From Macrostomum lignano (Eukaryota): a stretch of DNA of 64,000 nucleotides. The notes beneath the pieces are model-generated. The model worked only from the letters and a program-made list of their open reading frames with translations, was not told the DNA's origin and searched no databases. The first letter of the stretch is position 1. The number at the start of each line of letters is the position of its first letter. The stretch spans positions 1 to 64,000 of the forward strand of contig NIVC01001891.1 of the NCBI GenBank assembly GCA_002269645.1, given 5' to 3'. Made by a program: the position numbers and the translations under genes. Positions 14,152 through 64,000 of this stretch are shown in pieces.

Positions 14152-16377
14152 ATGACTCGAAACCGGGAGCGCTACCACCAGGCCGCCAGGGACGGCTATC
14201 TCGATCTGTTGCGCGAGGCAACGCGAAGCGAGGCGGACGGGCCAGACGAGAACGGAATGAGTCCGGTGATGTGGGCAGCCTTCTATGGCAATGTGGACGC
14301 GCTGAGGCTGCTCATACAGAGAGGGTGAGCGGGTTTTAAGGGGCAGATTGGTTCAACAGTAAAGGCGTCTGACTCTCGCGCCACCACCTCTGGTTTGATG
14401 CACGCGATTTGCACCCACGAGGACCAAATAGAAAGTCAGGGCCGCAGTACAGTATTGGCGCGCTTGTATGCACAACGGAAGGGGCCGTAGCCCAGTGGTC
14501 CCGCGCGGTGCTCTGGTGTGCCAGCGGCCCAGGCTCGACTCCAAATGCAGTCACAACAATTTGGGGCGGAATTGAAATTGCGGCTTGGCTCTGCTCGTGC
14601 AATTAACGGCCTTGAGGGCCACCCCCCAAGGCGCAGTGAAGTGTACATGGCTAACAATAAATAAAGTTAGGGCCGCTGTACACTCCTGTGTGAGTGTGTG
14701 CCTGTGCGTATGACTGCGTACGTATCCACGCGCCTGTGTGCTTGCTCAGGGGAGTCGGCGGAATGGGCAGTAATGCCTCTCGCCGGTTGTGACAATGTCG
14801 CTTGAAGTGCACCAGAGTGCACACAGCCCTGCGAATATTATTAGCATTATCATTGGGACTATGATGTGTGTCAAAACCCGTCCATTTGCTGCAGGGGCAA
14901 CCCGGACAAGACAGACTACATGGGCAGCAGTGCGCTGCACTTTGCCGCACTGAACGGCCACATGAACTGCGTCACCTTCTTAGTAAACTTTGGTGCCAAT
15001 ATTTGGATTTTGGACAACGATTTTCACACGGCACTGGATCTGGCAGGGCTGAGAGACCATCGAGACATCGTTGAGTACCTGGATGGCGTAGCTGGCAAGC
15101 AGGTGAGCATGAACCGGCGAGTTGTATCCAAGATGCGCGAGAAGGCAGCGCTGGAGGCGCAGAAGCGCGTAAAGAAATTCGACCGCCTGATGCGGAAGAC
15201 CAGCAAGAAGCTCGCAAAAAACGACCGGCAGCAGCAGGCGGCCCTGTCCGCTTCGTTTAACTCCTCGTCGTCGAGTGCTAGCACGATACTTCGCTCGAAC
15301 GCCACTAGCAATCCGAACTACCGGCACCAGACAAGGTCAGGGACGGAAGACGACGCCAGCGACCAGAGCCAGTCACGCCAGAGGTCGCTGTCCTTCGGTC
15401 TGACAGCAGCCGGAAGCTCCGGTGGTCGCGCCGGCAGTCTGTCAGACTTAGTCGGTGCGGTAACTCTCCGACGGCCTCAGAACGGCAGCGGGTCCTCTAG
15501 CAACGGCCCGAGGCCTTTCTCAGAATACCTCACCAGTGCGCGATCAAATCGGAGTCGCTACACGTTCGGTGCGGCTAGGAAAGTGGTCAGTCACCACAGG
15601 CAGCAGCAACAGCAACAGAATTCAGCAGGAGTCAGCAACAAAGACTACGGCGACTATAACGACGGCAATCTAGCTTTGTCAGCTTCGTCGCAGAGTTCAG
15701 ACATTGTCTACGCGAGGACAAGCGCCGATGGACGTTCTATTTTGTCCGGACCGGTCTCTGAGCCCGACATGCAGCAGCAACAGGACGCTGGACTGTTCGA
15801 GAGGCCTGGCTTTGGTAGCGTAGCTTTTTTCCACCGGCATCCGCGCACGGCGCCCTCCCAGGCGGCGCTCATGGCAAAAACGTTGAGCTCGTTGAAGGAC
15901 GCTCCACCGCTAGGACAGCAGCCGCAACCGCAGCCGCACCCAATGCTCCTTCAACCGCCGTCGCCGTCCTACAGCAGACGCAGCGGAGCAGCCGACTCGA
16001 TTGGCACGTCAGGCAGCCTGCTGCGCCGGTGGCGCGATCTGCCCTGGTCGGGCGAGGATCTCGACAACCTCGAGGATGACTACGAGTACGACGACGACAA
16101 CGACGACGTTGATGGCAGACTCGGTGGCGGCAAAGGGACTCTGAGACCGAGGAAGCAGGCCGATCTGGAGCTGTTCCTGACCTGCCTGGGCCTCCCGGAC
16201 TGCATGCCAGCGCTGGCCCGCGAGCAGATCGACCTGGACTCGCTCAGCCTGTGCACCGACGCCGACCTGCAGACGCTGGGCCTGCCGCTGGGCCCGCGAC
16301 GAAAAATTCTCGAGGCGATGCAGCGTCGACGCGTCGCTTTTGAGCGACGCGACTGTCTAGTAGACTTGCGACTGTGA
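14152..16377 (+). CDS. USH1G: SANS/HARP family scaffold (ankyrin repeats + central region + SAM), USH1G/ANKS4B homolog, 551 aa
   Basis: Exon 1 14152-14324 ([24 protein letters not shown]...[18 protein letters not shown]), GT donor, AG acceptor, exon 2 14895-16377; total 1656 nt. Contains [18 protein letters not shown], central [11 protein letters not shown] and C-terminal SAM ([10 protein letters not shown]...[10 protein letters not shown]), closely matching vertebrate USH1G as I recall it. Confidence 0.93.
14481..14665 (+). mobile_element. tRNA-derived SINE-like element in SANS intron 1
   Basis: Head ggggccgtagcccagtgg (A box) and ggctcgactcc (B box, 14532-14542), no tRNA acceptor-stem 3' half, ends in aataaataaa. 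Confidence 0.55.
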
Positions 16378-26100: not shown

Positions 26101-27660
26101 TATAGACTTTATTGAACGACAGTATCGCCACTGCAGCGCACTTGACCCGCTCTGCAAGTAGCAGTCTTACCCCCAAAGCCAGTCAATCAATAAGCAGTGT
26201 CATTATTACGCTTAACTTTGAGCTCTGGCTAGACCAGCTGCTGCTTTTGGCCGTTCTTCTAACAGTAGCTCCCTAACTCCCTATGCACCCACCGCGTTTG
26301 CAATTGCTGTCTTTGGCTAATTTGTTGACAAATAACCCCATAAACCCCTGCAAGACACCAGTGCATAACTTTATTTGCGGCAAAAAAGCATAACTGACCT
26401 TAGTAATGCCCCAAGGGAAAATAATTGTGTTTAATTATGCATTCCACGTGACTTCTAAGCTGACTCACAAGAATGCAATGAGATTATTTAATGGAAGTGA
26501 AGACCTTCCTGCAGACTGCAGAGTCCATTAGTGCACAGCACTCTTTGACTCGGAAAAAGAACGACTTAAGGACGATAGAAGACTTAAGCTTTTAAACTTC
26601 TGTGACTGCTTTCATGAGCTGTGACTAAAATTTGGTTACACGAGTGAACTGCTAAGCTAGCAGTTTCGTTGTGCCATAGACGAAATCATTGTGGGCTGAT
26701 TCTGGGTGCTCCATGCAGCGATTTTCCTTTTCTTCGCTCCTCGCAAGCCCCGCAAGCTAAACTCCTTTGCGGTCAGATAAATTCTTCAAAAAGAAGAAGA
26801 GTGAATGTCTTGCATAGATCGGAAGCAACTTTACTAAGTTTATTCCTAAGTTTGCTGATAGATCTTAACTCCGAAGCGAAGATCAAGAACAGGAAGCCAA
26901 GATAGCAAACAGATCAAGCTAAAAGCTTACCGGGCTCGTGCAAGCTGATGGAGAAGCCCGGGATGTGGTTAATTTCCTCCTCTTCTGTGAGGAAGCTGTT
27001 CGCATCCGAGTACAGCAGCAGGAAAAGCCCCTTGCCCTCCTCCGTCTGTGCAACGCTCCGATCCTCCGGCGTGAACGTGAAGCACAGGAAGCGCTCGGGG
27101 TCGCGGTACTCTGCGAACTCCTTGTCAAGATGGCAGTTTCGCGAGTTGAAAGTGCACGCTACCACCGTGTCTCGCAGCGTCTGGAACTGCTGCGAGCGGT
27201 AGGCGACCTGCTTCAGACTGAACATGCCGTCATCGTAGGAGCTGTAGGGATAGTAGGGAATCGCTGGGTGGGACTTGTTCGACTTGATGCGGTACCAGAT
27301 CCTCGCCAGGTCGTACGTCATGTCGTACACGGACCGGTTGCTGCCATACCTGTTGGGGATGCTCGAGTTCGAGTAGAAGTAGTGGATGTAGTCATTCGGA
27401 CACACCGTCACCGACGGGAACTGGAAGTCGTCCAGACCTTCGAAGGCCTCGGTGTTGACCGGGTACTCTAAGTAGCGGGTGAGCAGTTGGCCAAGGTGGA
27501 CGAAGAAGCCGACAACGGTGCCGAGGACGAACAGCAGCCAGACGGCGCGGTAGACGAGCGGCCCGTCGCTCAAACGTCGCACGCCGTGGATTGTCGTCTC
27601 CCTGGAGAACACGCGGCCGATCTCGGAGCGAGATTGGCTGTTAAGGTTTGTGTCGCTCAT
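23160..27660 (-). CDS. DEG/ENaC (ASIC/amiloride-sensitive sodium channel family) subunit, paralog A, 604 aa
   Basis: Exons 27660-26931, 25340-24784, 24138-23850, 23398-23160; phases match, 1815 nt. Pre-TM1 TTIHG motif, TM1, FPSVTVC, CFTF, Cys-rich thumb (ECGC), STNWP, TM2 [16 protein letters not shown] selectivity filter. Confidence 0.92.
25392..25944 (+). repeat. (AACC)n microsatellite in intron 1 of DEG/ENaC paralog A
   Basis: Directly visible, starting about 50 bp from the exon 2 acceptor. Confidence 0.97.
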
Positions 27661-28129
27661 GTTGCGATCTAATTGTTTGTAGACAATCTCGTACTTTAAA
27701 ACTGTATAATCTATTACTAGATTAAGTGTACAACTGCTGTGCGCATCGGCAAGACTTTTAAAGTCTCGAGTTGACTGCTTGCCTATTGGATGGCATTTAG
27801 CTAAGGCTTGAGAACTGCTCAGCCAATAAAGCCTCAAGAATAGTTTAGAGTGGCTTTAGACTCGAGTGGTTTCCCATGAACCCTTATACCTCAGTGAGCT
27901 ATTCTCCTGCAATGGAGCATGACTAATTGGCTAAAAAATGCCATTAAGTAAATCAATGAGGCAAGAGAAATGACCAATCGAATGAGCCAGGGCTACGGCA
28001 GATATGTAAGCTATGGAGAAACAGGCTGCACAGAAAGATTTAGTCTATTTCTATATTTGGTCTAATTCATATAGCTAGCGAAATATATGCTAATAACAGA
28101 TTATTCTTGCGGATACATGAATAAATACA

Positions 28130-45022: not shown

Positions 45023-47276
45023 GCTGTTCTCGACCCGCCATGCCCAGATCTTCAATGATGAGGCGTGACCGTCTGAGGACCAACCCGGCGGGTGGGTCCA
45101 ATGATGATTTCACCACACTCACGCAAAACAGTGATCATAACCTGCACATCGTGCAGATTAATCTGCACCACGCGGTCGCAGCCTCCAGCAGCCTCACCGA
45201 CACCCTCAATGGCACCGGTGTTGACATCTACCTCATCCAGGAGCCTTACACCGTGAGAGGTAAGCCCACCCTGCTGCCGAAAGGCTACCAGATCCTCTTC
45301 CTCTCTGGAGGGGAAACCCCTAGGGCCATTGCTCTGGTCAAGTACGAGCTCGCAGCCATGCTCATGCCGATGTTTTGCAATAAAGACATCTGTACCTTCA
45401 CCGTGAACGGGATGATTTTCTCATCCGTGTACATGGACATTCAGGATGAGCTTCCGTCACCCCTCCTGCAGGATCTCGCAAACTATTGTATCATCGAGAA
45501 CCGGAACCTCATTATTGGTTGCGACGCTAATGCTCACAACACTGCGTGGGCTAGCAGTAACACTAACCTTAGAGGTAGTATGCTTATTGATTTCATTAAC
45601 ACCTCGAATTTGCATATTTGCAACTTGGGGCGTAAACCCACCTTTGCGAATGCTAGCAGGAAAGAGGTCATTGATCTCACCCTTGCGTCCAGTAGCATCC
45701 TTAATCGGATTCAAAATTGGAGGGTCAGGGACGATATCCCCTCGCTCTCGGACCATTTCTACATCCATTTCAGCGTCACAGCTGGCGGCGCTCGCGTCAC
45801 CAAGGCGAACCGTCCCAATTTAAAAAGGGCGGATTGGACTGGCTTCAGAAGGGACCTTGAGTCTCTGATCAGCAGCGAACCGGCCGATGACCTGGAAGGC
45901 TGCGATGATATTCCGAGCATTGAAGCACGCTGCAACAAACTTGTCGAGCTGCTTAATGCGGCCACGATCAAGAACGCTCCTCCAATTGTCAGTAGAAAGA
46001 AGTACTCACCTTGGTGGAACAAGGAGCTCACCCGCTTAAAAAAGGCCTCCCGTCGGCTGCATCGGATTGCCAACCGGAACAACACCCCAGAAGACTGGGA
46101 GAACTACCACTCTGCTTTGAGAATCTACAAGAGTTGCATCCGGAAGGCCAAAAAGGACACCTGGAAGGCCTTCTGCGCCGGTTTAGAGGGCCAGCATCCT
46201 ACTGCCCGGCTGGTCAAGTCCCTCAGGCATGACAACCTCGCCCAGTGTAACTCCCTCCTCCATTTGGATGGCAACTATTCCAGAACCGCCGAGGAATCCC
46301 TCAATCTGCTTTTCTCAGCTTGTTTCCCCACATGCGAGCATCCTGAGCAAATCATTGCTGATCACAACCCAAGAGATCGACAGCTTTTCGAGCAGTGCGC
46401 CACCAAGAACTTAATTCAGCTGGCCGCCAACACTTTTAAGCCGTTCAAAGCCCCCGGCATTGACAATATCGCCCCCTGTGTTCTCCAGGAAGCGGTTAAG
46501 CTGCAGAGCTTCTCTGCCTTTTTCTCTAAGCTCATCACCGACTGTTTCACCACTGGGTACATTCCCACTATCTGGAGGACCGCTCAGGTGGTCTTCATCC
46601 CCAAGCCTGCCAAAGGCGACTATACTAATGTGAAATCTTTCCGCCCCATCAGCCTTACATCCTTCTGCATTAAGCTGATGGAGAGACTCATCTTGTGGAG
46701 GCTGCGCGACTGCGAGTTAAGGACGGCACCCATAAGTAAGCACCAATTCGCCTTCTAGCCAGGTAAAACCACAGATACTATAAACACTAGATAGGCCACT
46801 CAGGCTAATTTTCTGGGCAAGTTTTTTATTCTACTTTCTGCTTAGTAGCAATGAAAGGAAGCAACAGTATTATTTGCTAAGTTAGACAAATCGAGCGACT
46901 GTTCTTGAGACATCGTTTGCTATAAGATCGTCATAGACAACTAACTTGTTTTGGGCAGTAAGGGTGTACATTAAGACGCGACAGTGTACAATTCCGCTTA
47001 TCTTTTAAGTTTTAAAGTGGATGAAGGGGTAGTCTGAAATGGGGTTGATATCGGTTTCGTATAAGGCAGGGTGAGAGGATCGATAATTTAGGCGCACTGG
47101 TGGTGGGATAGAAAACCAAGGACTGCACATAGCTAGCCTGGGTTAGGGGTGGGGTTTGAGAGGTTGGGGGTTAGAAATTTTGGGGCTGGCAAATCGTGTT
47201 TAAATACAAGCTTATATTGATAAACAGGAAAAGAGTCAAGAGTTAATGAAAGTACTAGCTTTTCTATCTCGTAGAG

Positions 47277-50200
47277 ATGTCATTTGATTCGAACCACTGC
47301 TGTGCTCCCACTTGCACGAGCTCTGTGCTATCACCACCCGAGAAAGGAAATCCGGTGCGAATGCATAGATTTCCGAAAGATGAAACTGTGGCGAAGCGCT
47401 GGCAGCAGCTATTGGAGCTGGATATTGACCTCCAAACAATATGGTCACGGGGCCTACGTGTATGCAGCTTGCACTTTACGGACGAGGCCTACAACTGCCC
47501 TAAAAAGCGCCACGAACAAGACACCCGTCTTCGCTGGGACGCAATCCCACACCGAGAGCTGGTGCTGCCTCGGCTCGTTCGAATAGACCAACTACCCTCT
47601 GTGCAAAGAACTGATGATGAAGCTGACAACATGTACCCTCCAGTGCTGGAGCCAATTAGCGATCTGCCCGCAGCCGAGCCTGCGACCTGCCTGCTGCCAG
47701 TGCAGTGGCAGAGCAACAGTCGGCTACCAGATGCTGCACCGAGAATAGCTGTTGCTGCTGAGAGCTCTCACCTCTGCAGCCGATTCCAAGCACGAGAGGC
47801 AACGATAAAGCGACTGCGATCCCGAAAGCGACAAGCGATGATCAAACGGCTGCAACAGCAACTCTCGATGGCCAAGGCAAGTGCAGCGCAGTCGTGCATT
47901 CGTGGTCAACTGGGCTCTCGCAGTCGGGGGGTGCGCTGGTCGAAGGATGTCATCAACAGATCATTGCAGCTGCACCACAAGAGCCCTGCTGCTTATCGGC
48001 TGTTACAAAACCACTGGGGATTGGCTCTGCCATCGAATACATCCTTGAAGAGGCGCATTCGCCAGTTTTTTCCATCTGTTGGGCCGTGCCGCTTGACACT
48101 TCAGTTGTTAAGCAGCCAGCTGAATGCTGGCCCTGAACAAAGACGACTGGCGACCCTGTGCTTCGACGGCATAAGCTTGTCACCCAGCGTGCAGTACGAC
48201 TCGAACGCTGACAGAGTAGTCGGCTTCGACGACCGGACAGTCGGGGCACTGAGGGAGTGTACCAGCAGGCAGCAGCAGCAGGACGAGGAATGGGGTCGGC
48301 GCGTCCAGGTGAAGGCGGCGAGCAGGGACGAGGCCGTCAGCTTCAGGAGGTTCCGGACGGGGCACTCCTTGGAGCTGGCAGCCTACCGGAAGAGGATCGG
48401 CAAGGAGACCAGCGGCATGTGCCGGGCCTGCGGGTGCGAGGAGGAAACGGTGCAGCATGTGTGTGAGTGCGCCGCGACGGTGAGAGCTAGGGGCCGGTTT
48501 GGTGTGCACGGGCTGTCGGACCTCAGCAGGAGTCAGGAGAACGCCTTGGCCATGTGGAGATGGTACCGGGACCTCCCACCCGAGCCCGGAGGAGGACGGA
48601 AATCGGCCTAACGTCGGCCGGTGGCGCGGGTGCGTCACCGAAACAACAACAACAACAACAGCAGCAGCAGGAGCAGCAGCTGAAGCCAGTGAACGAGGCA
48701 GTAGTCGCCGTGCTGCGAGGTGTTGCGCAGGACTGGAAGCAGCCGATCGCCCAATATCCCGTGAGCCACACTCTCGGACAGTCCGGGTTCAAGGCCGCCA
48801 TCGCCGAGTGCTTGCGCGCCAGTCACGAGGCCGGAGTTCGGGTTGTTGCTCTAGTTGCCGACCAGGAATCAACGCAGTGGGCTCATCTGAGCAGGCAGGC
48901 AAGCGCGGCAGCACCGTTCTTACAGCATCCGGTTACACAGGCCCCTGTGTACGTGATGATTGACGTGCCACATTGCCTGAAGAACACCCGTAATGCCCTA
49001 ATGAAAAATGACATTGAGTTTGACGGCCAGAAGCTCGCGAAATGGCATCACCTACTCAGCTTCTACGAGGTCGACTGCAGCCGATCGCTACGACTTGCAG
49101 TTCGTTTGAGCGATGCTCACTTTAACCTACAGCTGGGACAGAAGATGCGGGTCTCTCTCGCAGCGCAGATTTTTAGCCGTTCCATCGCCAGCGGCATCAA
49201 GACACTCGTACACCACCAAGTGATGAAGGCTGACGCCCTGCAGACCGCCGAGTTCGCTGAGAGATTGAATGACGCGTTCGATCTGCTGAACTCATCACAC
49301 TCCTTCGTCAAAGGCACAAAGCAGCCGATTCGTCGTGAGTCGTTGGTGGACCAAATGGAGCAGCTGCGAAAAGTGGAGAATTTTGTGAAAAGCTGGCGCT
49401 TCCTTCCGCACACCGGCAGAGCTGCGAAGGCGACCATGAATTTCAAGGAGGGCTGGCTGTTGTCAATTTCTGCGATTCGCTGCTTGTCCGCTCAGTTAAT
49501 TCAGAACGAAGGCTTCGAGTACGTCTGCACGCGACGGTTCTCGCAGGATCATGTTGAGGTGAGCTTCGCATCAGCTGTGCATATTATGTGTTGCTCGTAT
49601 TTTTCGGTTCTTCGAGATTCTTTATGATTAGCTAATTTAGCTTCTTGAAGTTTCACTTTTTCAAAAACGCAATTTTACTCCTCGGAAAGGCAGTAAATGT
49701 AAATCATACTTTCAGAGTGCACCGAGTAGTACAATTTTAGCAAAGTGAAACGCCATCCCTTTTCAGAATCTCTTCAGCATCCTTAGAGGGCGCAACGGGT
49801 TCAATGAAAAACCCGAACTGTCAGCTTTCATTGGCGCCCTGAGATCAGTAGCGGCTGGTGGGCTCTCTAAGCCGGATTCATCGGCTAGGAACTGTGAGGA
49901 TGACGGCTGCTCAGCTGCGATCTCAGCTTCCGGCGCATCAGCTTGCGCATCAGTAGGACGAGACGACAGCACTGCTGCAACAAGTGACTGGACACCGCCG
50001 AGTGAAGCCTCTGGCAGCAATTCAAACGAAGCAGCCATCCCGCTGCTGCACGAACCGATGGAAGGCCTGGCTACTGTCCAAGACGATGCAGTACTGAACG
50101 AGGCCACTGAATACGTAGCTGGTTACGTGCTGAAAAAGAGTGGCGTATTGGACTGCAGCAACTGCAGGGCGGAGCTGACAGTGTCAGATCCGTCTGGCTG

Positions 50201-50537
50201 TCACATGCAGCACAAGCGTCTGCCCCACGCAGTCATCGGCCTCACGCATCCTTCACCTGCGGCTTTGGGCGAGTTCTGCAAGATGGAGGCTGCCTTCGTT
50301 GCGCAATCGCACAGTTTTATTGTGCAGCCGCAGGTAGCTAAACGATTGGCTGCTGTGTTCACAGCTGCAGCAGTTGCACTGCCGGCGTGCAGCTCACACG
50401 CTGCACATGTGCAGCGTCAGGTATGCAGCACGTTTGCACAGCTGCGACTGCATCATTGGTGCCGCTGCAAGATGAGAAGCCTGCGAGCAGCGGCGAGCAG
50501 GAGCAGCACGCTGCGAAAGTTTCACAAACTGCGATGA
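47277..50537 (+). CDS. P-element transposase (THAP zinc finger + RNase H-like DDE), 887 aa when reconstructed; currently disrupted by a LINE fragment
   Basis: 47277-48283 + 48673-49558 + 49767-50537 = 2664 nt in frame. THAP (CCAPTC...FP...W...CSLHF), CFDG, VADQ, DVPHCLKNTRN, SQDHVE|NLF, RGRNGFNEKP, YVAGY, LRLHHWC; GT-AG intron 49559-49766. Confidence 0.9.
48284..48658 (+). mobile_element. 5'-truncated LINE 3' end (375 bp) inserted in the transposase gene
   Basis: Encodes RFRTGH...YRKRI...CRACG-EEETVQH-CEC (non-LTR ORF2 C-terminus), (CAA)n tail; 14-bp TSD cagcagcagcagga (48270-48283 and 48659-48672). Tail type differs from the host LINE, indicating a different family. Confidence 0.92.
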
Positions 50538-53500
50538 GCTGTTTAATTGATGAGAAATCATTCTATTTGGATAAACGAAAATGGAGTATATAATAGCTTG
50601 TATTTGCTAAGTATAGTTAACAGCAATAATATGGCCGTCAATGCAATCTAAAGCATTCACACTGCTTTTTGTCGTAGAAAGTATAGTTAAAAGTTTATTT
50701 TTGCTAATATCAATACAATTGCTGCATTGTATTCATCTTGGTTTTTTAATTTTTTAAATATAAAAAAACGCTAAAATGTTTTATCACTACTAAGCAGAAA
50801 GTAGAATAAACTGTCGTGTTGTGAAAATTAGCCTGAGTGGCCTATCTAGTGTTTATAGTATCTGTGGGTAAAACCACCGAGCACGCTTTGCATGTTATTA
50901 CCTCAGCCATTGAGAAAGCTATCCTGAGTAAGCAGATTGCCTGTGGGCTTTTCTGCGATATCGATGGGGCCTTCAATAACGTTTTGTTTGGCTCCTTCAG
51001 TGACTCCCTTTTGCAGAAAAAGGTCCGACCCAGCATTGTGCGTTGGATCGACTTTATGATCCGGAACAGGAAGGTGACTTCCTCCCTCATGGATGCCACC
51101 TGCACTCACACGGTTACTAAGGGCGGAGCCCAAGGTGGAGTGCTCACCCCGCTGCTCTGGAATCTCGTGATGGACGAGCTCCTGACGGCTGACGTCCCCA
51201 GCAGCATAGTCAAGGCTGGCTACGCTGATGATGTCGCTGCTATTGTCAGTGGCCCTGACACCAGTACCCTCCGTAGCTTAATGCAGCAGTTCGCCAATAA
51301 GGCGCAAGCCTGGGCTACCCGGCACGGCCTAACCATTAGCACCGCTAAGACGGTGTCCATTATCTTCACCAGGAAGCGGAAGTGGAGCATGCGGAACCTC
51401 ACCATCTACGGTAAGGACATACCCTTAGTCAAGGAAACTAAGTATCTAGGTGTGACGCTCACCCACGATCTGCGTTGGACCAAGCACGCTGACAATGTCA
51501 TCGGGTGCGCCAGGCGCTGCTTTGCGCAGGTGAGGAGAGCCATCGGGCCTACTTGGGGTCTTTCTCCCAAGACGGTCAGATGGATTTACACTGGCATCGT
51601 TCGGCCCAGTATCACCTACGTGTGTGTTATCTGGTCCAGTGCGTTAGAGTTGAAGACTGTACGGGACCGGTTGTACCAGCTGCAGGGTAACATCTGCCAA
51701 GCCATCACCGGTGCGTATCCATCCACCCCTTACGAGGGGCTCAACACCATCCTCAGCATGCCTCCGCTGCATTTGTTCATTAGAGCTGAGGCGATGAAGG
51801 GCGCCGCGTGTCTCATCTGTGATAAATTTATTGCTAACACGCCCTCGGGCTTCATGCCTGAGAAGACTCTTTTCCCTCATCTGGACTATATCCGTCGCGA
51901 TCTTCAACGCATCCACCTCAATTTAGACGAGGTGGACTGCAGATCCCCCACTCTCATCCTCAGGAGGGGCTTCAAGTGTACTCTTCCACCGAGAGGGAGT
52001 CACTCGCTGGACGTGGGCATCAACAGGAGAAGCCAGGGTATTCACTGCTTCACTGACGGATCCCTGCGTGACGGTCTCGCTGGTGCGGGCATTGCCATTT
52101 TCCACAAGGGTGAAGCGATCTTACAAGAGAGTCTTCATCTTGGTGAGAATGTCTCGGTTTTTCAATCCGAAGTTGTAGCTATCAACCAGTGCGCTGAGCA
52201 TTTGCACAAAGCTGGCATCAGCAGCTTTGACATTTATTTTTACTCTGACAGCCAGGCCGCTATTAAGGCCTTGTCTTCTATCAAGCTCTCAACCAAGTCA
52301 GTCTCAGACTGCCTCAAAAGCTTGCAGACCCTAGCGATTCTCAACAGGATCAATGTTATCTGGACACCAGGCCATAGCAACATCCTCGGCAACGAGCTTG
52401 TGGATCAGCTTGCCAAGCGGGGTTGCACCCCTGATAGAGCGCAACGCTCAGTCAAGTTACCTTCTCCGAAGTCATCAATCAACCGCGCCATTCAAGATTG
52501 GCTAAACCGCCAGCATCAGACTCACTGGGACAGCTGCTCCGAATACCGGCAAGCACGAAAGGCTATGCCTGCCATTAACCGGAAAGTATCCGAATATCTA
52601 ATATCCTTAAGTAAAACTGACCTGAGGGAGATGTACATGGTCATTACTGGCCATGGCTTCTTCCAGAGACATATTTCACTGCAAAGTGGCTGCTCCCCTA
52701 TCTGCCCATTCTGTGATTTAGAGGAGGAAACCTTGACGCACCACGTCACTTTCTGCCCGCACTTCAACGAGGCGCGGAGGCGTCACCTCGGTCACCCGCT
52801 AAGGCTTGACAAGCTCACCACTCCGGACTGTATCCGTGATCTACGTGCATTCGTTCGGGATTCTGGGCGGATGAAAATCGCAGACGCCACTCTCGCGAGC
52901 TCTTCTGCTGGCGAGGGGTGGGCGCAGCCCCTAAACAAGTTTCTGTTTAGCTTGGGGTTGCGATAGGGGCCTCGCGGCCTGTTCGCGGCGCTCTGCCCCC
53001 CATCGGTAGTAGTAGTAGTATAGTCATATAAGAAATTTAGTGAATGATGCATACATGTCAATAGTTGGGAATAAATAAATAAATGCAATATTTTAGGCAT
53101 ATACATATATTGGATAAGGCAAAGTTGAGTAAAGGAAAGAGAAATGACACAATTTACTGAGGTTTACATGTATAAAGAGCAGAGAGACAAGGTGTTATCA
53201 AATCCAAATCAGAAGTAAGGCTTTAAAGCCTATACCTTGGCTTAGAGCATTTGGTCTAGCTGGCTAGCTGGCTATATATACATGTAAATGTACCTAACCC
53301 AAAAAACAAGGCTGAGGTTAAGTGTGCAGATGCATCAATTGCAGACTAACAGGCAGCCATACTATGCTAAAACTATAATAGTACTAATAGGTATAAAGAC
53401 AAGGGCTAGTAAATAGTTAATGATTGACTATAGTGGTGACTATTGGTTTTCATTCATTAATTTTATTTTTTTACTGCAAAAGGTTTTATCATTTAAAACA

Positions 53501-62561: not shown

Positions 62562-63704
62562 TTAAATACCCAGCAAGTTGTCAAGCGAACCAACAGCCCC
62601 GACAAAATTCTCGTCGATCCATTCGTCCTGCTCGTGCTGCATAATGGGGGACGGAGTGCTCGGCAGGCCGATCATGAGGCCGTTCAAAGAGCCATTCAAA
62701 CTGGCAGGATTCTGATGCTGCTGATGCTGATCACCCATGCCACCGTGGTTGGACCCGTTGGTGAGCCACCAGCTGGGCGGCGGCAGGGCCATGCCGTGCA
62801 GCGTCAAATCCAGCAAGCTGTCGGGATTCGACATGTCAAGCGCCGGCGTCGGGTCAGCCAGTACAGCGTCGTCATCCGGTTCAAACAGCCAGCGCTCGTC
62901 TTCGTCGAGATCTCCGACGCCGATGATGCCGCCTGGTAGAGCTACGAGAGAGTCGGCGCCAACGTTCGACACGGCGGTGGCCGCTGTAGAGTCTTTGCCT
63001 GGCGTCAGTGAAACTGACGATGCTGTCAGAGTGGAAACCGCGACGGAGGCCGCCGCTGCGGCTGCCGTTGTCGCCGCTACAGAGACGGCCGTGGCTGCGG
63101 CGGCGGCGGCAGAGGCTGCGGCAGCTGCTGCCGCTGTTGAAGCCGGCTGAGCCGTCAGGGTCGGGTCGCGGACTCGAGTCTCCACAGGGCCGCCGCTTAG
63201 AGCCATGGACACCCAGTGACCGCTGGAGTCGTGTCTGCCGCCGCTGTCCGCATCGACGCTTCTTCCGTTGCCAAATCTGCTCTCATCCTGGATTCGCCTC
63301 AGCTTTGCCGCCGCCGGGTGGTCGCTTAGCAACGGCGACTCGTCAGTTTGTTCATCGTGACTGTGATGCCGTCGATTGTTGTTGCCATGGAAACCGGCGC
63401 CGCCGTTTACAAGAGGCGAATCGAAAAGATGCAATGGCGGTGGCGGCAGCTGATGATGATGCTGAGGCTGCGTTGAGCGTTGACGCTTTAACAATCCGTG
63501 AGATGAAGGCGACACCTGATGATGCTGGTACTGCTGCTGCTGCGCATTAGCCAGCTCAAACTGGCCAGTGTAGTCTGGATTCAGGCGCCAGTAGCCGCCG
63601 CAACTGCCGGCGCTTCCGCTGCCACCACGGCTGGCCGCTTCGTCTTTGCGTCGAGGTACGCGTTGGAAGCAACGATTGAGGGTCAGGTTGTAGCGGACGG
63701 CGCT
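62562..63704 (-). CDS. FOXJ1: FoxJ1-like forkhead transcription factor, last coding exon (5' part lies beyond window)
   Basis: Acceptor tctctcccag at 63705; 1143-nt in-frame exon to TAA: SAVRYNLTLNRCFQRVPRRKDE-(insert)-GGYWRLNPDY is the C-terminal half of a forkhead domain with the FoxJ1-type VPRxKDE...GGxWR wing, phase-0 intron at the usual WQ|N position, and C-terminal LDLTLHG...PPSWW resembling the FoxJ1 DLTVHG motif. Confidence 0.8.
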   Translation of the reverse strand, partial: SAVRYNLTLNRCFQRVPRRKDEAASRGGSGSAGSCGGYWRLNPDYTGQFELANAQQQQYQHHQVSPSSHGLLKRQRSTQPQHHHQLPPPPLHLFDSPLVNGGAGFHGNNNRRHHSHDEQTDESPLLSDHPAAAKLRRIQDESRFGNGRSVDADSGGRHDSSGHWVSMALSGGPVETRVRDPTLTAQPASTAAAAAAASAAAAAATAVSVAATTAAAAAASVAVSTLTASSVSLTPGKDSTAATAVSNVGADSLVALPGGIIGVGDLDEDERWLFEPDDDAVLADPTPALDMSNPDSLLDLTLHGMALPPPSWWLTNGSNHGGMGDQHQQHQNPASLNGSLNGLMIGLPSTPSPIMQHEQDEWIDENFVGAVGSLDNLLGI

Positions 63705-64000
63705 CTGGGAGAGACGGGGGTTGTTGGAGATAATTTTAGAGTCGGTAACTACGAGCTTTACAAGCTACTAGCTGGCCAACAAGTTGGGTTATTGGGATAA
63801 GTATGCGTTGTGTTGCCCGATAAGGGGCGTCGCCACCGGGGTGGGGACAAGGGGAACATGTCCCCCAGTAAAAACTATGGGGGACATGCCAATGCTTTGC
63901 CCCACCCCACCCACCCAACTTTGTGACCCGTTATGGAAATAAATTTTGCTTCAGGGTGGCAAAATATAGTACCTGCGGCGCCAAAATGAGTACCTGCGGC

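What the first reader, a model, noticed from the sequence alone, without database searches (positions are those of the whole stretch)
63560..63704. FoxJ1-like factor with rewritten DNA-recognition helix (NSIRHNLS to SAVRYNLT)
Sequence: helix H3 reads S-A-V-R-Y-N-L-T-L-N in an otherwise open 380-codon exon, and wing 1 carries a Gly/Ser insert (AASRGGSGSAGSC). Established: the Asn and His of the N-x-x-R-H motif are the base-contacting residues and are near-invariant in forkhead proteins. Inference: replacing both (N to S, H to Y) while keeping R, N, L and the FoxJ1 C-terminal motif suggests altered specificity or a non-DNA-binding/dominant-negative paralog of the motile-cilia regulator.
Basis: partly seen in the sequence, partly recalled or inferred. 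Interest (0 to 1): 0.75.

Follow-up and report, generated by a model that had tools for sequence, protein, structure and literature searches.

The report
Divergent FoxJ1 paralog of a flatworm
This is the last exon of a real, transcribed Macrostomum lignano forkhead gene from a flatworm-only branch of the cilia regulator FoxJ1, a branch that has repeatedly lost the two amino acids forkhead proteins normally use to read DNA bases, so it probably no longer reads DNA the standard way.

Summary
On the minus strand, window 63704-62565 is an open 380-codon terminal exon. It begins S-A-V-R-Y-N-L-T-L-N and carries a 9-10-residue Gly/Ser insert in wing 1.

The window is M. lignano contig NIVC01001891.1. 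The exon belongs to the RNA-seq-derived gene BOX15_Mlig028538g1 (PAA62899.1). The upstream exon, outside the window, ends TGG CAG|GTGAGG and joins in phase 0, giving W-Q|S-A-V-R-Y. No alternative NSIRH exon exists in the locus.

FoxJ1 membership rests on four things:
- the best forkhead-domain matches;
- an N-terminal DLTNLGWLQN motif;
- two C-terminal motifs;
- an intron at exactly the position and phase of a canonical FoxJ1.

The closest relatives are a flatworm-only group of FoxJ1 paralogs (trematodes, cestodes, Gyrodactylus, Geocentrophora, planarian FoxJ1-2/-5). In these the base-contacting Asn and His are also replaced, and by varying residues. Other members and the second flatworm lineage, which includes planarian FoxJ1-4, stay canonical.

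The gene is therefore neither an artefact nor a pseudogene. It is one more case of a recurrent recognition-helix erosion that two flatworm Fox surveys do not discuss, and their gene set does not include this gene. Its function is inferred only: weakened or altered DNA reading, possibly through partner tethering.

The parts
62565..63704 (-). Terminal coding exon (380 codons) of M. lignano gene BOX15_Mlig028538g1. It encodes forkhead helix 3, the wings and the C-terminal tail.
   Evidence: open frame. (100% match to PAA62899.1 residues 347-727).
62562..62564 (-). Stop codon TAA
63705..63730 (-). 3' end of the 4.48-kb intron: pyrimidine-rich tract and AG acceptor (TCTCCAACAACCCCCGTCTCTCCCAG|AGC), phase 0
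   Evidence: The donor TGG CAG|GTGAGG lies outside the window at record position ~68187 (L001 11319).
63675..63704 (-). Recognition helix H3, S-A-V-R-Y-N-L-T-L-N. The Ser codon AGC is at 63702-63704 (Asn position) and the Tyr codon TAC at 63690-63692 (His position).
   Evidence: Each codon is one transition away from the canonical AAC / CAC.
63639..63674 (-). RCFQRVPRRKDE: strand S2 and the start of wing 1. The string RCFQRVPRRK is shared with the trematode divergent FoxJ1 proteins; in the 9-sequence alignment F, Q, R, V, P, R, K and E of this block are invariant.
63600..63638 (-). Gly/Ser-rich wing-1 insert AASRGGSGSAGSC, absent from all relatives and predicted disordered
63570..63599 (-). 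GGYWRLNPDY: strand S3 and the end of the forkhead domain
62766..62813 (-). LDLTLHGMALPPPSWW, a FoxJ1-type C-terminal motif (LDLT.xG...PP.WW)
   Evidence: Shared with FoxJ1 proteins of Tubulanus and Lytechinus and with trematode paralogs.
62565..62654 (-). C-terminal end motif PSPIMQHEQDEWIDENF......LDNLLGI
   Evidence: Shared with trematode and cestode paralogs, Geocentrophora FoxJ1-2, and Leptoplana and Schmidtea FoxJ1-1.
63036..63134 (-). Ala/Thr/Val low-complexity tract inside the exon, with no counterpart in relatives

Best explanation
Window 62562-63704 (minus strand) is the last exon of a transcribed, intact Macrostomum lignano FoxJ1-family gene. GenBank lists it as PAA62899.1, 727 aa and partial; the full protein is probably 733 aa.

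The gene belongs to a flatworm-only group of long-branch FoxJ1 paralogs, here called lineage B. This group is marked by CFQ(K/R)V..RRK(D/E)E in the domain and a W(V/I)D...LD.(I/L)LG(L/I) C-terminus.

Shown:
- The winged-helix fold, the hydrophobic core, the invariant Trp, Arg and Leu of helix 3, the basic start of wing 1, and the FoxJ N- and C-terminal motifs are all kept.
- The two residues that normally hydrogen-bond to bases are replaced, Asn by Ser and His by Tyr.
- The same two positions are replaced in most lineage-B relatives, by residues that differ between taxa.

Inferred:
- After FoxJ1 duplicated in flatworms, constraint on base reading by this copy relaxed.
- The protein no longer recognises RYAAAYA sites by the canonical mechanism.
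- It acts with weakened or altered specificity, and most plausibly reaches ciliary-gene chromatin through its conserved non-DNA-binding motifs and partners such as RFX.
- It probably works in a restricted set of ciliated cells rather than as the general motile-cilia master regulator.
For: Identity:
- 100% match to UniRef A0A1I8GW87 and PAA62899.1.
- Window coordinates equal NIVC01001891.1 coordinates.
- The GenBank annotation derives from RNA-seq transcript assembly (PMC5730564).

Splice junction:
- Phase 0, W-Q|S-A-V-R-Y.
- No alternative exon for this half of the domain.

FoxJ1 family:
- A HMMER scan of 1.84 billion representatives gives flatworm paralogs first, then proteins that their sources name FoxJ1, at ~90 bits. 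The best solved-structure matches, from other Fox families, reach 64 bits at most.
- Three collinear similarity blocks to Tubulanus FoxJ1: N motif, forkhead domain, C motif.
- Motifs confirmed.
- Identical intron position and phase in Tubulanus FoxJ1 (W-Q|N-S-I-R-H) and in the Opisthorchis paralog (W-K|E-A-L-R-Q).

Fold:
- AlphaFold2 mean pLDDT 82.8, with H1-H2-H3 and two wing strands.
- Pfam Forkhead 87.8 bits.

Recurrent erosion of helix 3:
- 0 of 11 members of the divergent group have Asn or His, against 118 of 123 other domains.
- Published flatworm FoxJ1 sequences read: Emul_J1_2 LALRQ, Gsa_J1_2 LDLRQ, Geap_J1_1 HSVRQ, Geap_J1_2 SSIRH, Geap_J1_3 SAIKH, Smed_J1_2 NSVRN, Smed_J1_5 TGIKN.
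- Letr_J1, Bose_J1_2/3, Smed_J1_1 and Geap_J1_4 keep NS(V/L)RH.

Consequence for DNA binding:
- Usually only Asn and His make direct base hydrogen bonds (PMC8501956).
- N208A plus H212R is the mutant labelled DBD in FoxO1 constructs (PMC8970673).

Partner tethering and restricted role:
- Xenopus Foxj1 is stabilised at promoters by Rfx2 (PMC5245798).
- Planarian foxJ1-1 and foxJ1-2, which are lineage-B type, are expressed only in a dorsal stripe of presumptive sensory ciliated cells and give no gliding defect on RNAi. foxJ1-4, which has the canonical CFEKV-type domain, is required for cilia (PMC3493443).
Against: - No binding, expression or phenotype data exist for this gene.
- Ser and Tyr can still donate hydrogen bonds, and the Arg of helix 3 is kept, so substantial sequence-specific binding is not excluded.
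- No second Macrostomum sequence could be retrieved, so purifying selection on S/Y (dN/dS) was not measured. The 50%-identity library collapses close relatives.
- Placement inside lineage B rests on neighbour-joining trees of ~106 columns with moderate support. The M. lignano gene grouped with the neodermatan paralogs in 178 of 300 bootstraps, and less often once more long-branch sequences were added. Long-branch attraction is possible. By raw identity the domain is closest to canonical flatworm FoxJ1s (Letr_J1, 55%).
- RFX tethering is extrapolated from Xenopus.
Confidence: 0.6

Rival explanations
1. It is a functionally ordinary FoxJ1. Ser and Tyr, together with the retained Arg, water-mediated contacts and the wings, still give near-canonical forkhead-site binding, and the gene is a normal motile-cilia activator, perhaps the main one in Macrostomum.
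For: The fold and all FoxJ1 motifs are kept. His to Tyr alone occurs in a fish FoxJ1-A-like protein (P0106). FoxJ1 was reported missing from M. lignano and only two long-branch paralogs were found in its congeners, so no canonical copy is documented in this genus.
Against: Asn and His are usually the only direct base hydrogen-bond donors. The paired N208A/H212R change is the mutant labelled DBD in FoxO1 constructs. Within the paralog group these two positions vary freely (S/D/E/G/L/H/T and Y/Q/K/N), which is not what a conserved base contact looks like.
Confidence: 0.2
2. It is a non-DNA-binding decoy. The protein has lost DNA binding and acts as a dominant-negative competitor, titrating FoxJ1 partners through the shared N- and C-terminal motifs.
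For: Both base-reading residues are lost while the partner or activation motifs are kept.
Against: The basic wing-1 start (RVPRRK), the helix-3 Arg and the whole fold are strongly conserved across the paralog group, which suggests the domain still contacts nucleic acid or chromatin. A canonical FoxJ1 to antagonise has not been shown in M. lignano.
Confidence: 0.12
3. It is a decaying duplicate, a young pseudogene left by the recent M. lignano genome duplication, and the helix changes are neutral damage.
For: M. lignano has a recent genome duplication and a redundant assembly. The exon has low-complexity expansions and a wing insert.
Against: About 733 codons stay open across three exons with consensus splice sites. 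Short motifs at both protein ends are retained. The gene model is transcript-derived. Comparable helix-3 states persist in distant flatworm lineages.
Confidence: 0.05
4. It is an annotation or splicing artefact, and the real mRNA encodes a canonical NSIRH helix through another acceptor or exon.
For: None found.
Against: The donor is phase 0. The only nearby alternative AG shifts the frame. tblastn finds no other exon for this half of the domain in the 27-kb locus or the window. The same intron position precedes the equivalent codon in Tubulanus and Opisthorchis.
Confidence: 0.02

Closest known systems
Neodermatan divergent FoxJ1 paralogs: Echinococcus multilocularis FoxJ1-2 and Gyrodactylus salaris FoxJ1-2 of Pascual-Carreras et al. 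2021; unnamed Schistosoma, Trichobilharzia, Opisthorchis, Clonorchis, Paragonimus, Calicophoron and Mesocestoides proteins
   Same: Best whole-library matches, at 45-50% identity over the domain. They share TLIYMA..SLKK.K.TL..IC.WI, RCFQRVPRRK(D/E)E, WRLNP, the N-terminal D(S)LTNL.WLQN motif, LDLT..G...WW, the C-terminal W.D...LD.ILGL, and an intron at the same codon. Both Asn and His are replaced.
   Different: The replacement residues differ: D/E/G/L and Q/K there, S and Y here. They lack the Gly/Ser wing insert and the poly-Ala/Gln tracts. The trematode and schistosome proteins carry an extra K(I/V)S.KFL..WQN block after the domain. Whether the loss is shared or independent is unresolved.
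Geocentrophora applanata FoxJ1-2 and FoxJ1-3 (Prorhynchida)
   Same: Same Asn to Ser change, and in J1-3 the same W-Q-S-A start of helix 3. They also share SLKKNK.TL, FAFY/FAYY, PSPIM and the LLG(L/I) end.
   Different: They keep His. J1-3 also changes the helix Arg to Lys. Neither has a wing insert.
Canonical FoxJ1 (e.g. Tubulanus FoxJ1-A-like XP_074647082, Lytechinus FoxJ1-B-like, Schmidtea FoxJ1-4)
   Same: Domain architecture, N- and C-terminal motifs, and intron position and phase.
   Different: Canonical W-Q-N-S-I/V-R-H-N-L-S. The Pfam score is 128.7 bits against 87.8. Schmidtea FoxJ1-4 is experimentally required for motile ciliogenesis; nothing is known for this gene.
Engineered FoxO1 N208A/H212R mutant, labelled DBD in the constructs
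   Same: The same two helix-3 positions are changed together.
   Different: It is an artificial mutant in a different Fox family, with Ala and Arg rather than Ser and Tyr.
Teleost FoxJ1 extra copies: Gouania FoxJ1-B-like WQKAIRWNLS and Parambassis FoxJ1-A-like WQNSIRYNLS
   Same: Natural FoxJ1 duplicates with the helix-3 His replaced by Trp or Tyr, and in Gouania also Asn replaced by Lys.
   Different: These are independent vertebrate events; they do not belong to the flatworm lineage and are otherwise close to canonical FoxJ1.

Membership tests
Forkhead (Fox) winged-helix family | A forkhead domain detectable by profile and folding as H1-H2-H3 plus wings | tested here: met
   PF00250 scores 87.8 bits against a cut-off of 27 on the full protein. 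46 solved forkhead structures match, down to E=9e-17. The AlphaFold2 model has pLDDT 82.8 and the expected elements.
Forkhead (Fox) winged-helix family | N-(S/A)-I-R-H base-contacting motif in helix 3 | tested here: not met
   The helix reads S-A-V-R-Y. Only the Arg is kept. 118 of 123 comparison domains have Asn, and 118 of 123 have His.
FoxJ1 subfamily | The forkhead domain is most similar to FoxJ1 among Fox classes | tested here: met
   After the flatworm paralogs, the top single-domain hits are proteins that their sources name FoxJ1 (Tubulanus, Lytechinus, Sphaerodactylus) at ~84-90 bits. The best matches among solved structures, FOXN3/C2/L2/A2, reach 64 bits at most. Neighbour-joining trees place the gene within the FoxJ1 hits, with a long-branch caveat.
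FoxJ1 subfamily | N-terminal DDSLT(S/N)L.WLQ motif | tested here: met
   The gene has MDMDLTNLGWLQNMNLMKL. This aligns to Tubulanus FoxJ1 residues 29-61 at 54.5% identity, E=7e-9. A similar motif is present in a flatworm FoxJ2/3 sequence, so it marks the FoxJ classes rather than FoxJ1 alone.
FoxJ1 subfamily | C-terminal LDL(T/S).xG...P.W(W/F) motif and an acidic LD..LG end | tested here: met
   LDLTLHGMALPPPSWW and ..WIDENF...LDNLLGI match source-named FoxJ1 proteins and the flatworm paralogs.
FoxJ1 subfamily | Phase-0 intron between the W-Q and the Asn codon of helix 3 | tested here: met
   Position and phase are identical in M. lignano, the Opisthorchis paralog and canonical Tubulanus FoxJ1. 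Whether this position is exclusive to FoxJ1 among Fox classes was not tested.
FoxJ1 subfamily | Activates the motile-cilia gene programme | not testable with these tools
   No expression or functional data were found for Mlig028538.
Flatworm FoxJ1 'lineage B' paralogs (informal grouping used in this report) | CFQ(K/R)V..RRK(D/E)E in the domain plus a W(V/I)D...LD.(I/L)LG(L/I) C-terminus, as opposed to the CFEKV type | tested here: met
   Signatures are present. The gene co-clustered with lineage-B sequences in 50-73% of neighbour-joining bootstraps. The grouping itself is mine and needs a proper maximum-likelihood phylogeny.

The most novel reading that the evidence does not exclude
Macrostomum may have no FoxJ1 with a canonical recognition helix.

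- Gasiorowski (2025) attributes the two Macrostomum FoxJ1 paralogs to a duplication within the genus.
- Both give only ~1e-20 to 1e-23 best hits to a canonical FOXJ1. By my rough estimate that is ~110-125 bits, close to this gene's 113 bits against canonical FoxJ1 and below the 150-167 bits of Geocentrophora FoxJ1-2 and canonical Leptoplana FoxJ1.

If so, a heavily multiciliated animal would run its motile-cilia programme with FoxJ1 proteins that cannot read DNA through the Asn and His contacts. More broadly, the repeated erosion of helix 3 in flatworm FoxJ1 paralogs would mark a shift of this forkhead domain from direct base reading to partner-tethered or non-canonical recognition.
Probability: 0.25. 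Interest if true: 0.7.

Novelty: new variant of a known kind. Interest (0 to 1): 0.45.

Why it matters
FoxJ1 is the conserved master regulator of motile cilia, and flatworms depend on such cilia for locomotion, feeding and excretion.

Two surveys of flatworm Fox genes describe FoxJ1 as unusually labile: expanded, long-branched, absent from catenulids, and first reported missing from Macrostomum. Neither discusses the DNA-reading residues, and their M. lignano set lacks this gene.

This gene, and a whole group of flatworm paralogs, keeps the fold and the FoxJ1 motifs but has lost the two base-contacting residues. That gives a concrete, testable natural experiment on three questions:
- how far a forkhead domain can drift and remain useful;
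- whether FoxJ1 can work through partners such as RFX without canonical DNA reading;
- how the ciliogenic programme is wired in early-branching flatworms.

M. lignano has transgenesis and RNAi, so the tests are practical.

Tried and rejected
1. The word-indexed protein search performed poorly on this query.
   - With the whole exon it returned only the self-match, because low-complexity words dominated the candidates.
   - With the 105-aa domain it returned nothing.
   - With a 9-sequence alignment it returned four weak hits.
   - The exhaustive HMMER scan gave the relatives instead.
2. Exact-sequence look-ups failed for the UniRef protein, the 317-aa window ORF and the extended 733-aa protein. 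I therefore obtained no homeolog or congener DNA and no dN/dS.
Fold assignment rests on sequence matches to solved structures and on the AlphaFold2 model.
4. P0105, a Ser-containing sequence that sometimes paired with the gene in trees, comes from an apparently unspliced gene on a metagenome scaffold. It is not a Macrostomum paralog.
5. The FOXN3 hit that topped the solved-structure list was not taken as evidence for FoxN membership. No FoxJ1 structure appeared among the matches, and source-named FoxJ1 proteins score much higher.
6. The alternative acceptor and alternative exon hypotheses were rejected.
7. No AATAAA or ATTAAA signal lies within 765 nt downstream of the stop codon. I did not pursue this.
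8. A literature search for Mlig028538 found nothing.
9. I remembered FOXG1 N232S as a pathogenic Asn to Ser change. I could only confirm that it is among the neuropathogenic alleles cloned in PMC8835715, so I have not used it as evidence.
Full report
**What is in the sequence**

The feature lies on the minus strand. Translating window 62562-63713 gives ..LSQ|SAVRYNLTLNRCFQRVPRRKDEAASRGGSGSAGSCGGYWRLNPDY.. and runs open to a TAA at 62562-62564.

- The exon proper is 63704 to 62565, exactly 380 codons.
- It has no stop in frame, against 7-18 stops in the five other frames. None of 20,000 shuffles stayed open.
- Pfam recognises the C-terminal half of a forkhead domain.

**Where it comes from**

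- The exon is 100% identical to UniRef A0A1I8GW87 and to GenBank PAA62899.1 (BOX15_Mlig028538g1) of the flatworm Macrostomum lignano.
- Fetching that gene's contig showed that the window is NIVC01001891.1 positions 1-64000 of assembly GCA_002269645.1.
- The GenBank annotation of this assembly was made from a genome-guided RNA-seq transcript assembly (PMC5730564). The gene model therefore reflects transcripts.

**Gene structure**

- The protein maps to three exons.
- The exon upstream of the window ends ..GAT CAA AGC TGG CAG|GTGAGG. The window exon starts ..CCCCCGTCTCTCCCAG|AGC GCC GTC CGC TAC.
- The junction is phase 0 and reads W-Q|S-A-V-R-Y. The intron is about 4.48 kb.
- The AG two bases downstream would shift the frame.
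- tblastn with canonical and native half-domains finds no other exon for this half of the domain in the 27-kb locus or in the window.
- An in-frame ATG six codons upstream of the 'partial' GenBank start, preceded by a stop, suggests a complete protein of 733 residues.

**Family assignment**

- The full protein scores 87.8 bits on Pfam Forkhead. A canonical FoxJ1 scores 128.7.
- An exhaustive HMMER scan of 1.84 billion representatives returned flatworm proteins first. Next came canonical-helix proteins at 84-90 bits, which their sources name FoxJ1 (Tubulanus, Lytechinus, Sphaerodactylus).
- The best solved structures, all from other Fox classes, reach only 64 bits.
- Outside the domain the protein has the N-terminal motif DLTNLGWLQNMNLMKL, a C-terminal LDLTLHGMALPPPSWW, and a terminal ..WIDENF...LDNLLGI. 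All three are shared with source-named FoxJ1 proteins and with the flatworm relatives.
- The intron sits at exactly the same codon and phase in canonical Tubulanus FoxJ1 (TGG CAG|..AG|AAT TCC ATT CGC CAT) and in the Opisthorchis relative (TGG AAG|..AG|GAA GCT CTT CGC CAA).
- AlphaFold2 predicts the expected H1-H2-H3 and wing topology (pLDDT 82.8). Only the insert is disordered.

I file it as a FoxJ1-family gene that fails one family hallmark, the N-x-x-R-H helix.

**The rewriting is not unique to this gene**

The closest relatives come from trematodes (Trichobilharzia, Schistosoma, Calicophoron, Opisthorchis, Clonorchis, Paragonimus) and a cestode (Mesocestoides).

- They share TLIYMA..SLKK.K.TL..IC.WI, RCFQRVPRRK(D/E)E and WRLNP with the M. 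lignano protein.
- Every one lacks both Asn and His, reading D/E/G/L and Q/K instead.
- In my sample, 0 of 11 members have either residue, against 118 of 123 other domains.

The FASTA supplement of Gasiorowski 2025, compiled from Pascual-Carreras 2021, adds published FoxJ1 sequences of the same type.

| Sequence | Five residues at the NS(I/V)RH positions |
|---|---|
| Echinococcus FoxJ1-2 | LALRQ |
| Gyrodactylus FoxJ1-2 | LDLRQ |
| Geocentrophora FoxJ1-1 | HSVRQ |
| Geocentrophora FoxJ1-2 | SSIRH |
| Geocentrophora FoxJ1-3 | SAIKH |
| Schmidtea FoxJ1-2 | NSVRN |
| Schmidtea FoxJ1-5 | TGIKN |
| Leptoplana FoxJ1, Bothrioplana FoxJ1-2/3, Schmidtea FoxJ1-1, Geocentrophora FoxJ1-4 (same signature group) | NS(V/L)RH, canonical |

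A second flatworm lineage, the CFEKV type, is uniformly canonical. It includes Schmidtea FoxJ1-3 and -4, Mesostoma, Monocelis, Gyrodactylus FoxJ1-1 and Echinococcus FoxJ1-1. It also includes Schistosoma, Hymenolepis, Paragonimus and Dicrocoelium proteins.

This fits Gasiorowski's reconstruction of a FoxJ1 duplication in the rhabditophoran ancestor and his remark on long FoxJ1 branches.

**Shared or independent loss**

- Neighbour-joining trees put the M. lignano domain with the neodermatan divergent group in 178 of 300 bootstraps.
- It falls inside a broader flatworm 'lineage B' cluster in 50-73% of replicates.
- By raw identity it is closest to canonical flatworm FoxJ1s (Letr_J1, 55%).
- AGC and TAC are each one transition from canonical AAC and CAC. 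By the genetic code (my own reading) they are two steps from the D/E and Q codons of trematodes.
- Taxa branching between Macrostomum and Neodermata keep canonical copies.

I therefore lean towards independent erosion in Macrostomum, but this remains unresolved.

**Mechanism**

Established:
- Helix 3 lies in the major groove, and usually only Asn and His make direct base hydrogen bonds (PMC8501956).
- The Asn is described as ultra-conserved (PMC12143875).
- N208A plus H212R is the mutant labelled DBD in FoxO1 constructs (PMC8970673).

Shown here:
- Those two positions are replaced, and they vary between orthologous groups.
- The Trp, Arg and Leu of helix 3, the core, the basic wing-1 start and the non-domain motifs are conserved.

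Inferred:
- Base reading by the canonical route is weakened or lost.
- The domain still contacts chromatin.
- The protein is recruited or stabilised by partners.

Two published results make a specialised, partner-dependent role plausible:
- Xenopus Foxj1 is stabilised at promoters by Rfx2 (PMC5245798).
- Planarian foxJ1-1 and foxJ1-2 are restricted to a dorsal stripe of presumptive sensory ciliated cells and give no gliding phenotype on RNAi. foxJ1-4 is required for cilia (PMC3493443).

Rivals are near-normal binding, a dominant-negative decoy, a decaying duplicate and an annotation artefact. Each is listed with its test in the Rival explanations section.

**Novelty**

- The gene is already annotated as a hypothetical forkhead protein, and flatworm FoxJ1 expansion is published.
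- Pascual-Carreras 2021 reported FoxJ1 as missing in Macrostomum, as relayed by Gasiorowski.
- The compiled set of 44 M. lignano Fox genes does not contain this sequence.
- Neither paper mentions the recognition helix. Gasiorowski's text has no hit for 'recognition helix' or 'DNA-binding', and Pascual-Carreras has none for 'helix 3' or 'recognition'.

I rate it a new variant of a known kind, of moderate interest.

**Limits**

- No congener or homeolog DNA was available, so there is no dN/dS.
- No maximum-likelihood phylogeny was built.
- There are no expression data.

Noticed in passing
window 63960-64000, continuing outside the window (L001 14544-15546); second array at L001 12530-13552: The forkhead-splitting intron holds two ~1-kb minisatellites with 21-nt periods (also scored as 46- and 42-nt units). 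The last 41 bases of the window are the edge of one of them.
   Followed up: partly
window 63769-63933: Three nested inverted repeats lie in the intron just upstream of the exon: 28-nt arms at 71%, 14-nt arms at 86% and 11-nt arms at 100% complementarity. Together they form a ~165-nt palindromic element, possibly a small transposon or hairpin.
   Followed up: no
L001 9983-10000 (record ~69506-69523, outside the window): An in-frame ATG (MTAASS..) lies six codons upstream of the 'partial' start of PAA62899.1 and is preceded by a stop, so the complete protein is probably 733 aa.
   Followed up: partly
window 45040-52966 (+): This looks like a nested transposon. A LINE-type endonuclease ORF (45040-46758) and a reverse transcriptase plus RNase H ORF (50837-52966) are separated by a THAP / TNP-like (P-element/THAP9-type) transposase split over two ORFs (47277-48611, 48554-49627).
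   Followed up: no
window 26914-27837 (-): An open frame matches the amiloride-sensitive sodium channel family (ASC/DEG-ENaC, PF00858, E=1.5e-28).
   Followed up: no
window 14866-16377 (+): A 503-aa open frame carries ankyrin repeats and a C-terminal SAM domain.
   Followed up: no
window 63036-63134 (-): A 33-residue Ala/Thr/Val/Ser low-complexity tract sits inside the FoxJ1 exon. With the poly-Gln tracts, it swamped the word-indexed protein search with unrelated candidates.
   Followed up: no
library proteins P0041/P0044 (Gouania willdenowi) and P0106 (Parambassis ranga): Teleost extra FoxJ1 copies also change helix 3, reading WQKAIRWNLS and WQNSIRYNLS. Erosion of the base-contacting residues in FoxJ1 duplicates is therefore not confined to flatworms.
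   Followed up: partly
library proteins P0002-P0007: Several very long proteins (774-1758 aa) match the query domain in 4-8 separate stretches. They may be multi-forkhead proteins or fused gene models. Their origin was not looked up.
   Followed up: no
library proteins P0076, P0097, P0101, P0103, P0119, P0147, P0120, P0121: These canonical-helix (NSIRH) forkhead proteins, whose origin was not looked up, carry 4- to 19-residue insertions exactly between W-Q and N-S-I-R-H, which is the conserved intron position. They look like intron read-through or mis-spliced gene models.
   Followed up: no
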